Sequence record: ON529860.1
Direction: 5' to 3' (one strand)
DNA: 64,000 bases
Shown here: positions 21,115 to 23,693 of the stretch, piece after piece
Layout of the letters: each line of letters begins with the position of its first letter
How positions within the stretch are numbered: position 1 is the first letter of the stretch
Notes under the pieces: generated by a model
Told to the model about the DNA's origin: nothing
Databases searched by the model: none
Seen by the model: the letters and a program-made list of their open reading frames with translations, nothing else
Position numbers and translations under genes: made by a program

Positions 21115-21645
21115 TCAGGACGGGCGAAGCTGGCTCAGCCGCATCTCGTCGATCCCCTTCGCCAGGGCGTAGTTGGAATAGGCGCGGTCCCCGGTGATCT
21201 CGGCGTCGACGGCTTCGGCGAACCAGGCCGGCATGTTGACGCCGTGGTTCTCGTCCGGCAGTTCGACCTCCAGGATCATCAGGTGGCGCAGGGCGGGGTG
21301 ATCGAACATGTCGAACTCCAGCGTCAGGTCGCCGTGCGGGATCGACCAACGCGTCTTCTCGATACAGGCGCCTTTTGTGTGGTGGATCGCCAGGTTCAGG
21401 TAGGTCATCCCGTCGATCTCGAACTCGATCTCATGGCTGGCGAAGGCAGAACCTTCGACGGGCCGCTTCATCGTCAGGTGATAGCGCGGGTTGAACAGCT
21501 TGCACGAGGTCTGGCGGATGCGCACGATCCATTCGCCCGTCCCCTGGATGTAGGCCTGGGTGATCTTCACCATGCGGGCGGCGTCCAGGACGGCTTCCGG
21601 CGGCAGCGACTTGAGCCGGAACCGGCGTTCGATCTCCACGCTCAT
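21115..21645 (-). CDS. CYTH / triphosphate tunnel metalloenzyme
   Basis: VEIERRF (ExExR), VRIR, LTMK, HEIE, IEKTR, LEVEL motifs. Confidence 0.85.
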   Translation of the reverse strand: MSVEIERRFRLKSLPPEAVLDAARMVKITQAYIQGTGEWIVRIRQTSCKLFNPRYHLTMKRPVEGSAFASHEIEFEIDGMTYLNLAIHHTKGACIEKTRWSIPHGDLTLEFDMFDHPALRHLMILEVELPDENHGVNMPAWFAEAVDAEITGDRAYSNYALAKGIDEMRLSQLRPS

Positions 21646-22358
21646 GCCGGCGCTCCGACGCTGTAAGCGGCTTCCTGCATCCGGCGCAAGGCTTGCGGCC
21701 GGAACGGGACTTCAGCCCGCACAACATCACGCGCGGCGTCCGACGGCTTGAACGTCACATGGGCGCCATGGGGCGACCAAACCGCCCGCACCGGATAGAC
21801 GAGGCCCGCCTGAACGGCGCCGGCGTACTCGTTGTGAATGAACGGCTCGTGGGTCCCGAACTCGACGCCGCGCACCGGCAGCAACAAGCGGGCCACCCGC
21901 CGGTTCACCGCCATCGGCTTAAAGTCCCATCCGCCCCGCTCGACCACTTGCTGGAAGGTGCAGACTTGGTCTGGATCGCCCTCCAGGGTCTTTTCACAGG
22001 CGTAGAGACGCCCCTTCAGGGTCACTTCCCATACGACGTCCTGGCCCTGCGCATCCTGTTCGCACGGCCGCAGGCGGCCGTCGGCGACCGCCGTCACGAC
22101 CAGAGCGCGAAGCGTCGGGTCTTCCCGCATCGGCGTGCGTCGCGCCTCGCCCAGCCAACTATACCGCAGGGTGTCGGCGCCGGTGTCGGCGGTGATGACC
22201 ATGGCGCCGGAGCGGGCGACCGCCGCCCACATGGCGTCGTCCTCCATCTGGGCGCTCTCGGGGTCCATGCCTTGCGGCGCGCGCGCGATGTCGGCGACGG
22301 CCGGCAATCCGACCAGGGCGGCGAGCGCGGTGAAGACGGTGCGTCGGTTCATGTTCAT
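21642..22358 (-). CDS. hypothetical protein with Tat-like signal peptide
   Basis: start moved to MNMNRRTVFTALAALVGL; twin Arg plus hydrophobic core. Confidence 0.65.
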   Translation of the reverse strand: MNMNRRTVFTALAALVGLPAVADIARAPQGMDPESAQMEDDAMWAAVARSGAMVITADTGADTLRYSWLGEARRTPMREDPTLRALVVTAVADGRLRPCEQDAQGQDVVWEVTLKGRLYACEKTLEGDPDQVCTFQQVVERGGWDFKPMAVNRRVARLLLPVRGVEFGTHEPFIHNEYAGAVQAGLVYPVRAVWSPHGAHVTFKPSDAARDVVRAEVPFRPQALRRMQEAAYSVGAPA

Positions 22359-22364
22359 GCCGCT

Positions 22365-22437
22365 TTTCTGCCTTGTCGATTTTTTCGTGTCAACCGCAAC
22401 GGCGCCGGTTGACAGCAATCCCGGCACATGCGAGAAA
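22365..22437. promoter_or_regulatory. back-to-back divergent promoters
   Basis: inverted repeat TGTCAACCG-N9-CGGTTGACA gives TTGACA on both strands, each followed at 17 nt by (C/G)AGAAA. Confidence 0.5.
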
Positions 22438-22443
22438 GAACAC

Positions 22444-22909
22444 CTCGGCGGCGCGGTCCCAGGACAGCGCCGTCGGGCGATCTCGACCGGCACACGGGCT
22501 TGGGAAGATCAGAGGAATAGATGGGGAACCACAGCAGCGCTCCGGCGGGCTGCCCGATCACCGCGCTATCCTTGCGGACCCCTCAGGGGATAGGCTCTGA
22601 CGCCGCAAAGATGTCGAGAGGACGGACCCTGCTGAACGGCGCTGTAACGCCGCCTCGGCAGGGAGCAAGGTTGACCCGACGCGTCTTCAGGCGCGTCCTC
22701 GACTGGACCCCGCCCATTACCAGTATCGTAGGTGGCTAAGCGTTCGCCTCCCCCGTCCGGGACATGTACCGGCCGGACCGAGAGGTATTCGCGAGGCGAG
22801 CACGCCAGGGTTACGTCACCGAAGCCGGTTCACCCGCCCGGCGCGATCGAGGGTCCATGGCCCTCCTTACCAAACCCCCGTCGGCTCGCGTCGGCGGGGG
22901 TCTCTTCTT
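22444..22909 (+). ncRNA. candidate long structured non-coding RNA (RNA1, ~465 nt)
   Basis: no convincing protein ORF; many hairpins; bounded by TTGACA promoter and terminator-like hairpin 22874-22909; family not recognised. Confidence 0.45.
22874..22909 (+). terminator. terminator-like hairpin
   Basis: ACCCCCGTCGGC/TCGC/GTCGGCGGGGGT followed by CTCTTCTT. Confidence 0.55.
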
Positions 22910-22917
22910 GAGGGCCT

Positions 22918-23136
22918 ATGCCGTACCAGATCAGGATCACCACCGCCGACTGCGAAACCCTCTCGGGCCAGACAGGCCTCAAGGGGATGATCTCAGGCTT
23001 GCGCGCCATGAAGGCCTGGGCCGAGGAACACACGCCGGGATGGACCTACATCGCGGGCCTTCAGCGGTTCCAATTCCAGACTGCGGATGACCTCGACCGG
23101 TTCGAAGCGACGTTCAAAAGCGCGCCGGAAGCCTGA
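22918..23136 (+). CDS. hypothetical protein (72 aa)
   Basis: SD GAGGG; protein-like composition. Confidence 0.7.
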   Translation: MPYQIRITTADCETLSGQTGLKGMISGLRAMKAWAEEHTPGWTYIAGLQRFQFQTADDLDRFEATFKSAPEA

Positions 23137-23410
23137 CGAGTCTTCAAGGCTGTATCGGGCGCTAACCCGGAGTTGCCTGGTCTCGTGATGATCAGGGCTG
23201 ATTTTCCTGGTGTTTCCTGCGCCGTATCCCAACAATTTGTTAAGACCTCAGGAGGCGTCTCCAGGCGGACTCGCTGCGCTTTCGGGCGAGGCTTCCCTGC
23301 CGCCGGGGATGGCGGGGCCTCGCGGCCGGAGCGTAATCGGGGGGCGTCATGCGCTCGCACAGGGAAGTGTCCTGCCAAGGACAAGCCTTTGTGGCACACT
23401 TGGGGCGAAA

Positions 23411-23442
23411 CGAAAAGCCCCGCCGGCGAACCGACGGGGCTT
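23411..23442 (-). terminator. intrinsic terminator
   Basis: AAGCCCCGTCGG/TTCG/CCGGCGGGGCTT then TTCGTTT on minus strand. Confidence 0.75.
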
Positions 23443-23658
23443 ATCCACAAGGGAAGGTCCTAAGACCTCGCTCGATGCCTCTTGCCTTACGGCTATCCCG
23501 CATAACGCGTGGACCCCTCACAGGGCGGGTGGACGCTTTTGCCCCGAATGGCGCAACCGATCTATCGTCCGAAACAGGGTGAGACCTCGGCGGCCGCACG
23601 AGGTCTCGGGCGTTCTCAAGCCGGCGTTCCGATCCTCGTACTGACCGGCGATTGAACA
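23411..23658 (-). ncRNA. candidate structured non-coding RNA (RNA2, ~245 nt)
   Basis: promoter TTGACT-N17-CATACT, internal 9-bp stem, ends at UUCG-capped terminator with U-tract; no plausible ORF. Confidence 0.5.
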
Positions 23659-23664
23659 GGCGGG

Positions 23665-23693
23665 AGTATGGCCCAGCTTGACTGTAAAGTCAA
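23665..23693 (-). promoter_or_regulatory. sigma70-type promoter for RNA2
   Basis: TTGACT (23693-23688), 17-nt spacer, CATACT (23670-23665); the -35 sits in palindrome CTTGAC-N6-GTCAAG. Confidence 0.6.

What the first reader, a model, noticed from the sequence alone, without database searches (positions are those of the whole stretch)
22388..22909. Candidate ~465-nt structured non-coding RNA (RNA1) in a gene-dense phage
Seen: about 550 bp free of credible protein genes, starting at a TTGACA promoter and ending in a GC hairpin with a pyrimidine tail. Internal stems include CCCTGCTGA-a-CGGCG/CTGTAA/CGCCG-cc-TCGGCAGGG (22627-22663), GACGCGTC/TTCA/GGCGCGTC (22678-22697), CTATCC...GGATAG, GCAGC...GCTGC and GAGGG...CCCTC. 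It lacks hallmark sequences of tRNA, tmRNA, RNase P, SRP or group I introns. Established: phages do carry large ncRNAs of unknown function (GOLLD, ROOL). Inference: a new large phage RNA family. Caveat: a 72-codon ORF (22521-22739) has a good SD (GAGGA) but a non-protein-like composition.
Basis: partly seen in the sequence, partly recalled or inferred. Interest (0 to 1): 0.7.

Follow-up and report, generated by a model that had tools for sequence, protein, structure and literature searches.

The report
New structured RNA gene in jumbo phages
A roughly 470-base gap between genes of a giant Brevundimonas phage is very probably a gene for a folded, non-protein-coding RNA of an undescribed family, seen so far in only seven related giant phages, and its function is still unknown.

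Summary
The window is Brevundimonas phage vB_BpoS-Papperlapapp (357 kb). Positions 22359-22917 form one of only two gaps over 500 bp in 49 kb of tightly packed genes.

- **Not coding:** the 72-codon ORF is truncated, altered or lacks its start in relatives, and its substitutions show no third-position bias.
- **Conservation:** RNA blocks are 96-100% identical in phages whose neighbouring genes are 74-93% identical.
- **Shared module:** a 190-nt 5' part is also present, in another genomic context, in the distant phages Kikimora and Gurke. It comprises a promoter, a 5' hairpin and a 133-nt multi-helix core.
- **Base pairing:** two helices there differ at about 47% of columns, yet every pair is kept (9 pairs changed on both sides). 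The rest of the core is about 94% invariant.
- **Lineage-specific 3' part:** the 3' 280 nt shows no detectable similarity between the two lineages.
- **No known family:** Rfam and ARAGORN find nothing, and no homologue turned up in IMG/VR, metagenomes, GTDB genomes or plasmids.

Verdict: a real, new, narrowly distributed structured RNA. I infer a trans-acting binding platform with leaky termination into a small downstream gene. No expression data exist.

The parts
22409..22437 (+). Promoter-like element. The -35 TTGACA is at 22409-22414, followed by a 17-nt spacer ending in TGC (22429-22431), then a weak -10 GAGAAA (22432-37).
   Evidence: TTGACA and TG.GAGAA are invariant in all seven phages although the spacer differs (A2). 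This combination occurs once in the window. The tool's strict sigma-70 scan does not report it because the -10 is weak. The upstream mirror hexamer at 22387-22392 belongs to the divergent gene.
22442..22909 (+). Inferred RNA1 transcript, about 468 nt. Its ends are inferred from the promoter and terminator and have not been measured.
   Evidence: The homologous unit in Kikimora is of similar length and has its own strong terminator.
22444..22477 (+). P0, a 5'-terminal hairpin of 11 + 3 pairs with a CCAG loop.
   Evidence: 18 of 34 columns vary, yet all 14 pairs are kept in 7 of 7 sequences. Five pairs change on both sides, including one C-G/G-C swap between the near-identical Kikimora and Gurke.
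22484..22616 (+). Conserved 133-nt core domain. It has closing helices (CGAC/GUCG, CGGC/GCCG, GGGCUUG/UAGGCUC) around a junction that carries Pc, Pd and Pe.
   Evidence: About 86% identical to Kikimora and Gurke in a different genomic context. Covariance-model alignment. The few single-base differences fall at unpaired positions or give G-U pairs.
22503..22519 (+). J, a 17-nt purine-rich segment (GGAAGAUCAGAGGAAUA) predicted to be unpaired and containing a Shine-Dalgarno-like AGAGGA.
   Evidence: 0 of 17 columns vary across both lineages. No complementary site elsewhere in the window.
22520..22559 (+). Pc, a long hairpin (GAU.GGG / CAGC / CGC stems) with a UCCG, CUCG or UUCG loop.
   Evidence: 17 of 40 columns vary and all 13 pairs are kept. 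Four pairs change on both sides between lineages.
22561..22589 (+). Pd (CCGCG, loop CUAUCCU, UGCGG) and Pe (CCCC, loop UCA, GGGG) hairpins.
   Evidence: Both stems are invariant, so covariation cannot test them. The only variable base (22572, U/G/A) lies in the Pd loop. Both hairpins are predicted in the Kikimora minimum-energy fold.
22627..22663 (+). H_a, a peripheral hairpin that can be lost.
   Evidence: A 39-nt deletion removes most of this hairpin in Marchewka. One-sided G-U-compatible changes occur in the others.
22670..22703 (+). H_b, a hairpin with an inner stem at 22678-22697 and a UUCA or UUCG loop.
   Evidence: Three inner pairs change on both sides among the five close phages: AU/UG/CG, CG/AU and GC/AU.
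22736..22845 (+). Conserved 3' block of the Papperlapapp lineage. It contains a branched element at 22743-22800 (with an ACC-GAGA-GGU hairpin at 22777-22786) and hairpin 22824-22842.
   Evidence: 96-100% identical in all five phages. The closing pair of 22824-22842 changes from G-C to U-A. No detectable counterpart in Kikimora or Gurke.
22849..22865 (+). H_e, the GAGGG/CCCUC hairpin.
   Evidence: Present in three phages. In Bambus and Marchewka it is remodelled by a 4-nt insertion, and a 62-nt insertion follows it.
22874..22909 (+). Terminal hairpin (12 pairs) with a CUCUUCUU tail, read as an intrinsic terminator that is probably leaky.
   Evidence: Terminator scan. The stem is kept in 5 of 5 phages. 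Kikimora has a related penultimate hairpin followed by a separate strong terminator.
22521..22739 (+). 72-codon ORF, judged not to be a gene.
   Evidence: It is 46 codons in Domovoi and Kabachok, has a different C-terminus in Bambus and Marchewka, and has no start codon in Kikimora or Gurke. Differences by codon position are 7/9/4, with 3 synonymous against 12 non-synonymous codons. No Pfam or PHROG match.
22918..23136 (+). A real 72-aa gene immediately downstream. It probably depends on read-through from RNA1.
   Evidence: 17 of 26 differences are at third codon positions, with 16 synonymous against 7 non-synonymous codons. It starts 8 nt after the terminator tail and I saw no promoter of its own. 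It is present only in the Papperlapapp lineage.

Best explanation
RNA1 is a genuine gene for a structured, non-coding RNA of about 470 nt, transcribed rightwards from its own promoter and ending at an intrinsic terminator.

**Shown**
- It does not code for protein.
- Its core is under stronger nucleotide-level constraint than the neighbouring genes.
- Several helices are maintained by compensatory changes on the plus strand.
- It is modular. A 5' module is shared by two distant phage lineages. It consists of a promoter, a 5'-terminal hairpin and a 133-nt multi-helix core with an invariant 17-nt purine-rich single strand. The 3' ~280 nt is specific to each lineage.

**Inferred**
- The 5'-terminal hairpin protects the RNA from decay.
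- The sequence-invariant parts of the core (J, Pd, Pe and the closing helices) form a specific docking surface for a partner conserved in all these phage-host pairs. That partner could be a protein or the translation machinery. The RNA would then act in trans as a scaffold or decoy during infection.
- P0 and Pc only need to be helices, so their sequences are free to drift.
- In the Papperlapapp lineage the weak U-tract lets some transcripts continue into the 72-aa gene at 22918-23136.
For: - **Identity and context:**
- **Non-coding:**
- **Conservation:** core blocks are 96-100% identical against 74-93% for flanking CDS.
- **Second context:** the same module sits in Kikimora and Gurke with its own promoter and a strong terminator, next to unrelated genes.
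- **Pairing:** 53 pairs, 100% of 371 cells paired, 9 pairs changed on both sides. No shuffle in 500 reaches this, and slid controls give 36-46% paired.
- **Uneven variation:** 35 of 74 columns vary in P0 and Pc. Only 6 of 93 vary in J, Pd, Pe and the closing helices.
- **Strand:** 53 of the 371 cells are G-U pairs, which would be A-C mismatches on the other strand. This points to a plus-strand RNA.
- **Hairpin loops:** UUCG-type and GAGA loops cap several hairpins.
- **Peripheral hairpins** are deleted or inserted in relatives without touching the conserved blocks.
- **3' hairpins:** further compensatory changes.
- **Promoter:** the -35 and TG.GAGAA are invariant in 7 of 7.
Against: - **No expression data** exist for any of these phages.
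- **Few sequences:** only seven sequences in two lineages, so the covariation amounts to few independent events. The alignment used for counting was fitted to the model.
- **Untested helices:** the core's closing helices and Pd and Pe never vary, so they are untested. The full-length consensus fold proposes a different pairing for part of the core.
- **Weak thermodynamics:** z = -0.9 to -2.7.
- **Weak -10 hexamer:** the strict promoter scan misses it.
- **Possible transfer:** the module sits in non-syntenic places, so part of its conservation could reflect recent transfer between lineages.
- **No partner:** the trans-acting scaffold or decoy role is inference only. No partner has been identified.
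Confidence: 0.5

Rival explanations
1. RNA1 is a cis-acting leader. The conserved 5' module would sense a signal (riboswitch-like) or modify RNA polymerase (processive antitermination, as phage HK022 put RNA does). It would thereby decide whether transcription passes the downstream terminator into the following genes.
For: In the Papperlapapp lineage the architecture is promoter, long structured leader, terminator, then ribosome-binding site and a real gene only 8 nt later, with no promoter of its own seen. The module begins right at the transcript start in both lineages. In Kikimora it points the same way as the downstream operon. The consensus fold pairs CUUGGGAAGA of the core with the terminator tail.
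Against: The downstream genes of the two lineages are unrelated, and the 72-aa gene is absent from Kikimora and Gurke. In Kikimora the RNA is followed by a strong terminator and then a fresh promoter-like TTGACA before the next gene. About 280 nt of well-conserved, lineage-specific structure separates the module from the terminator, which is unusually long for an expression platform. No known aptamer or antitermination family matches.
Confidence: 0.2
2. RNA1 is a base-pairing regulator. Its Pd loop and Pe hairpin would pair with a second small RNA made from the minus strand of the neighbouring gap (23408-23658), or with another target.
For: GCTATCC-N-GGACCCCTCA occurs twice in the window, at 22565-22585 and 23492-23520, against 0.00 expected. 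The second gap has a minus-strand promoter and terminator. A minus-strand transcript would therefore carry 7 + 10 nt complementary to RNA1. Kikimora also has both elements.
Against: Only GGACCCC(U) of the complementarity is kept in the other phages. The 7-nt part is disrupted in Bambus and Marchewka. The shared piece is itself a hairpin, so similarity and complementarity cannot be told apart. The J segment has no complementary site in the 64-kb window.
Confidence: 0.1
3. The region works at DNA level, as an origin, operator array or packaging signal, and the hairpins are incidental.
For: It lies at a strand-switch with back-to-back promoter hexamers that form an inverted repeat at 22389-22413. 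It is very well conserved as DNA.
Against: There are no iterons or other repeats. GC content is 67%, with no AT-rich stretch. Compensatory changes preserve pairing, not sequence, and 14% of the pair cells are G-U, which favours an RNA of one strand. Variation is concentrated in helices while the unpaired J segment is invariant.
Confidence: 0.05
4. The region encodes one or more small proteins, either the 72-codon ORF or another short frame.
For: A good Shine-Dalgarno-like AGAGGA lies 6 nt before the ATG at 22521 in five phages.
Against: The ORF is truncated, altered or lacks its start in relatives. No frame shows third-position bias, whereas the real neighbouring gene does. No family matches. 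Nucleotides are invariant where synonymous change would be expected.
Confidence: 0.03
5. The element has no present function. It would be a recently transferred or hitch-hiking piece of DNA whose conservation only reflects recent common origin.
For: The module sits in non-syntenic positions in the two lineages. The family is tiny and is absent from every large collection searched.
Against: Recent origin cannot explain about 47% variable columns in two helices next to about 6% in the remainder of the same 190 nt. Nor can it explain why all 25 variable paired columns keep pairing. Within the Papperlapapp lineage the RNA is more conserved than the adjacent genes.
Confidence: 0.05

Closest known systems
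GOLLD and ROOL (large structured RNAs often carried by phages and prophages)
   Same: A large (over 400 nt), highly structured RNA without a conserved ORF, carried by a phage and of unknown biochemical function.
   Different: No match to the Rfam models, even at E-values up to 10. No tRNA genes nearby. RNA1 is smaller, extremely narrow in distribution, and only its 5' third is conserved between lineages.
phi29-type packaging RNA (pRNA)
   Same: A phage-encoded RNA with its own promoter. It has a conserved, structure-constrained 5' domain and a 3' domain that is less constrained.
   Different: No Rfam match. The phage type differs. I made no fold comparison with pRNA, and nothing links RNA1 to the head or packaging genes. 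This is an analogy only.
Protein-sequestering RNAs such as 6S RNA or Y RNA
   Same: These are independently transcribed, stable, structured RNAs whose invariant segments serve as a docking surface. That is the mode of action I infer for RNA1.
   Different: No sequence or model similarity. The fold is a multi-helix junction, not a long bulged hairpin. No partner has been identified.
Transcription-attenuation leaders, riboswitches and put-type antitermination RNAs
   Same: In the Papperlapapp lineage the layout is promoter, structured RNA, terminator, then the ribosome-binding site of a real gene.
   Different: The downstream genes are unrelated in the two lineages. The Kikimora copy is insulated by a strong terminator and a new promoter. 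No known aptamer class matches.
tmRNA of phiCbK-like phages
   Same: Related giant Caulobacter phages can carry a tmRNA (PMC13459779). RNA1 is of similar size, and the Kikimora and Gurke 3' domains contain a T-loop-like hairpin.
   Different: ARAGORN and the Rfam tmRNA models find nothing in any of the seven loci. I saw no acceptor stem, CCA end or tag reading frame. The original genome paper also found no tmRNA (PMC10070969).

Membership tests
Independent structured ncRNA gene (generic) | No conserved open reading frame, and a substitution pattern that is not codon-like | tested here: met
   The ORFs are broken or absent in relatives. No frame shows third-position bias, unlike the neighbouring gene.
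Independent structured ncRNA gene (generic) | Base pairs maintained by compensatory changes | tested here: met
   9 doubly changed pairs, 100% of cells paired, 0 of 500 shuffles. Searches cover the 3' hairpins. Met only for P0, Pc, H_b and H_d; the other helices are invariant.
Independent structured ncRNA gene (generic) | Own promoter and own terminator | tested here: inconclusive
   The terminator is found by the scan. The -35 and TG.GAGAA are invariant in 7 of 7, but the -10 is weak and the strict promoter scan misses it.
Independent structured ncRNA gene (generic) | A discrete transcript accumulates | not testable with these tools
   No expression data are available for these phages.
tmRNA (one-piece or two-piece) | A tRNA-like acceptor and T-arm domain plus a tag reading frame, as detected by ARAGORN or the Rfam models | tested here: not met
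Bacterial RNase P RNA | Match to the conserved catalytic core (Rfam models) | tested here: not met
   no hit at E-values up to 10 in an 1.8-kb search.
GOLLD / ROOL | Match to the family covariance model | tested here: not met
6S RNA, SRP RNA, phi29 pRNA, known ribozymes and riboswitches | Match to the family covariance model | tested here: not met
   Only chance-level hits of 16-20 bits, all to unrelated families.
Attenuation leader / riboswitch | Lies in the 5' UTR with a terminator directly before the regulated gene | tested here: met
   Met in the Papperlapapp lineage only.
Attenuation leader / riboswitch | Conserved association with the same downstream gene family | tested here: not met
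   The downstream genes are unrelated, and the 72-aa gene is confined to one lineage.

The most novel reading that the evidence does not exclude
RNA1 is the founding member of a new class of large phage RNAs. Its invariant four-way-junction core would be an active centre or a specific ribonucleoprotein platform used by giant Brevundimonas phages to take over a host process such as translation. The lineage-specific 3' domains would be exchangeable functional modules.
Probability: 0.3. Interest if true: 0.75.

Novelty: new member of a known kind. Interest (0 to 1): 0.55.

Why it matters
Giant phages are mostly annotated as lists of hypothetical proteins, and their non-coding RNAs are almost unexplored.

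In this genome, genes usually abut or overlap. Yet two lineages that share little alignable DNA in the 20 kb compared have both kept the same 190-nt RNA module. About 94% of the columns are invariant outside two helices that covary freely. That degree of constraint implies an important and very specific interaction.

If a transcript is confirmed, it would add a new family to the short list of large phage RNAs. It would also give a tractable entry point for asking what such RNAs do during infection. One lead is the defined core with its invariant single strand resembling a ribosome-binding site.

The value is limited for now by the tiny family size and the absence of expression data.

Tried and rejected
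**Known families**
- Rfam at gathering threshold on the whole window, and at E-values up to 10 on the locus and on the Kikimora and Marchewka loci, gave only chance-level hits.
- ARAGORN found no tRNA or tmRNA in the window or in eight related loci.

**Search for more homologues**
- IMG/VR: exact and degenerate motif scans returned only chance hits, checked by reading them and by covariance model.
- JGI metagenomes: one chance hit.
- GTDB genomes.
- Plasmids.
- All GenBank phages at relaxed E-value.
- Neighbouring genes as anchors.
- Result: nothing beyond the seven phages.

**Other tests**
- Homology of the 3' half between lineages: none detected by nhmmer.
- A paralogue in the second gap: the covariance models do not detect it, and only a short motif is shared.
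- Repeats or iterons as an origin signature: none.
- Targets complementary to the J segment within the window: none.
- Coding potential of every ORF and frame: rejected.
- Literature: no description of this RNA. The genome paper reports tRNAs only and no tmRNA.

**Competing fold**
- The full-length consensus fold pairs UUGCGG with CCGCAA and the core with the 3' tail. I prefer the local-domain fold. All three single-base differences in that stretch then fall at unpaired positions, whereas two of them break pairs in the consensus fold.

Full report
**Identity and context**

The window is Brevundimonas phage vB_BpoS-Papperlapapp (ON529860.1, 356,874 bp, Dolichocephalovirinae, host B. pondensis). 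Window position plus 124,000 gives the record position.

In the first 49 kb of the window the genes abut or overlap. Only two gaps exceed 500 bp: 22359-22917, which is the finding, and 23137-23689. The finding lies between a leftward gene (21642-22358) and a rightward 72-aa gene (22918-23136). GC content is about 66% throughout.

**The observation**

Details are in the observation check.

Thermodynamics alone is not persuasive in this GC-rich DNA. The z-score is -2.7 for the full RNA, -0.9 for the 5' module, and -2.0 for the Kikimora 5' module.

**Relatives**

Blastn finds the region in exactly seven GenBank phages, all giant phages of B. pondensis.

- **Group A:** Papperlapapp, Domovoi, Kabachok, Bambus and Marchewka carry it at the same place.
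- **Group B:** Kikimora and Gurke share little alignable DNA with Papperlapapp. Of the 20 kb compared, only about 4% (Kikimora) or 1% (Gurke) aligned. Yet they carry an 86%-identical 144-nt stretch in a different genomic context. It sits inside a 1-kb unannotated gap with its own TTGACA and its own strong terminator.

**Not coding**

- The 72-codon ORF shrinks to 46 codons in Domovoi and Kabachok.
- It has another C-terminus in Bambus and Marchewka.
- It has no start codon in Kikimora or Gurke.
- Its differences fall 7/9/4 over the three codon positions, with 3 synonymous against 12 non-synonymous codons.
- The real gene at 22918-23136 shows 7/2/17, with 16 synonymous against 7 non-synonymous codons.
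- No reading frame across the RNA behaves like a gene.
- Pfam and PHROGs find nothing.

**Constraint**

Identity to Bambus and Marchewka, the two most distant group A phages, compares as follows:

| Region | Identity |
|---|---|
| RNA1 block 22435-22630 | 96-97% |
| RNA1 block 22736-22845 | 96% |
| Five neighbouring CDS | 73-95% (the two adjacent genes 88-92%) |

Variation in RNA1 is confined to peripheral hairpins. A 39-nt deletion removes most of 22627-22663 in Marchewka. A 62-nt insertion precedes the terminator in Bambus and Marchewka.

**Modularity**

Only the first ~190 nt are shared between groups A and B: the promoter, the 5' hairpin P0 and the core. A profile of the group A 3' half finds nothing in Kikimora or Gurke. 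MAFFT does align a short terminal hairpin and a CUUGAGG motif.

The downstream genes of the two groups are unrelated. The 72-aa gene exists only in group A.

**Structure of the shared module**

I built a covariance model with a local-domain fold and realigned the seven sequences to it. The fold has these parts:

- P0, at 22444-22477.
- Closing helices CGAC/GUCG, CGGC/GCCG and GGGCUUG/UAGGCUC.
- An unpaired 17-nt segment J, at 22503-22519.
- Hairpins Pc (22520-22559), Pd (22561-22577) and Pe (22579-22589).

On that alignment all 371 pair cells are standard pairs. Nine pairs change on both sides: five in P0 and four in Pc. No shuffle out of 500 reaches these values, and sliding the partners drops pairing to 36-46%. 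One of the double changes separates the nearly identical Kikimora and Gurke.

Variation is strikingly uneven:

| Part of the module | Variable columns |
|---|---|
| P0 and Pc | 35 of 74 |
| J, Pd, Pe and the closing helices | 6 of 93 |
| J alone | 0 of 17 |

Fifty-three of the 371 cells are G-U pairs, which would be mismatches on the opposite strand. The functional molecule is therefore a plus-strand RNA.

Caveats:
- The alignment was fitted to the model.
- There are only two deep lineages.
- The invariant helices are untested.
- The full-length consensus fold offers a competing pairing. I consider it less likely, because two of the three single-base differences there would break its pairs.

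**3' domain of group A**

- Hairpin 22678-22697 has three doubly changed pairs.
- The closing pair of hairpin 22824-22842 changes from G-C to U-A.
- The terminator stem is intact in all five phages.
- Several hairpins end in UUCG-type or GAGA loops, which I recognise from general knowledge as typical of stable RNA structure.

**Transcription signals**

TTGACA (22409-22414) and TG.GAGAA (22429-22436) are invariant in all seven phages, although the spacer between them differs. I read this as a -35 element plus an extended -10 with a weak hexamer. That is an inference. The strict scan does not report it, and the pattern is unique in the window.

A start about 7 nt downstream would put P0 at the very 5' end of the transcript in both lineages.

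The terminator tail in group A is interrupted (CUCUUCUU). The real gene at 22918 starts 8 nt later, and I saw no promoter for it. Partial read-through is therefore likely.

**What it is not**

Rfam (4,227 families) gives no hit at gathering thresholds on the window. At E-values up to 10 on the locus and on related loci it gives only 16-23-bit chance hits. ARAGORN finds no tRNA or tmRNA.

There are no repeats or iterons. No further homologues were found in IMG/VR, JGI metagenomes, GTDB genomes, plasmids or the protein collections.

The genome paper reports tRNAs only and no tmRNA (PMC10070969). I found no paper describing this RNA.

**Interpretation**

It is shown that a non-coding, plus-strand, structure-constrained element is conserved beyond the level of its neighbouring genes.

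The rest is inferred. I take it to be an independently transcribed RNA whose sequence-invariant core is a docking surface for a conserved partner, acting in trans. It would also act as the leader of a small gene in group A. I put about 0.85 on a functional RNA-level element and about 0.5 on the full statement.

The main rival is a cis-acting leader, at 0.2. The rivals section sets out the others.

In my private reasoning I twice began to write bacterial RNA sequences from memory (RNase P RNA and 4.5S RNA), along with some short textbook consensus motifs. I stopped each time. Every motif quoted in this report is copied from tool output for the window or the fetched loci.

Noticed in passing
window 23408-23693 (minus strand): The second large gap looks like another small-RNA gene of about 250 nt on the minus strand. 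It has a promoter TTGACT-17-CATACT (23693-23665) and a strong terminator (23442-23415) with a UUUUCGUUUC tail. It is conserved in the five close phages. A 70-nt block is also present in a 570-bp gap of Kikimora (L016 2213-2782).
   Followed up: partly
window 22565-22585 and 23492-23520: The motif GCTATCC-N-GGACCCCTCA occurs in both gaps on the plus strand (2 hits, 0.00 expected). If the second gap is transcribed leftwards, its RNA would be complementary to the Pd loop and Pe hairpin of RNA1. Only GGACCCC(T) is kept in the other phages.
   Followed up: partly
window 22512-22519 versus 22566-22572 and 22588-22593: The Pd loop CUAUCCU could pair with AGG(A)AUAG of the J segment (7 pairs, one bulge). 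It could also pair with GGAUAG just after Pe. This is a possible pseudoknot or a pair of alternative conformers. All positions are invariant, so covariation cannot test it.
   Followed up: no
L002 1938-2440 (Kikimora): Upstream of the Kikimora RNA1 homologue lie two further mini-units, each with a promoter and a terminator. They are at about 1940-2135 and 2138-2270, the second with TTGACG-17-CATACT. A 31-codon hydrophobic ORF follows (2313-2408). This looks like a cluster of small transcription units.
   Followed up: no
L002 2812-2829 and the same place in L003: The group B 3' domain has a 5-pair hairpin (one bulged A) with a 7-nt loop, UUCGAUC in Kikimora and UUCAACU in Gurke. It resembles a tRNA T-arm, and the differences are confined to the loop. 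ARAGORN calls no tRNA or tmRNA there.
   Followed up: partly
window 22440-22454 (minus strand): Read on the minus strand, the P0 hairpin is followed by a U-rich tail, and the terminator scan reports it. It could insulate the divergent promoter of gene 21642-22358 from antisense transcription.
   Followed up: no
window 22387-22414: The two TTGACA hexamers of the divergent promoters form an inverted repeat (GTCAACCG, 9 nt, CGGTTGAC). This may be an operator. In Kikimora the two hexamers are direct repeats instead.
   Followed up: no
window 23441-23449: TTATCCACA, which I recognise as DnaA-box-like, lies just beside the minus-strand terminator. It differs by one base in Domovoi and in Bambus and Marchewka. 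A single 9-mer is near chance expectation in 64 kb.
   Followed up: partly
window 21642-22358 (minus strand): The gene next to RNA1 encodes a protein with a signal-peptide-like N-terminus. It is unusually divergent in Kabachok (69% nucleotide identity against 96% in Domovoi), with many non-synonymous changes.
   Followed up: no
L003 1987-2598 (Gurke): The Gurke record annotates a 203-aa hypothetical protein on the opposite strand across the RNA1 homologue. Kikimora has no such annotation and the ORF is not conserved, so this is probably an over-call.
   Followed up: no
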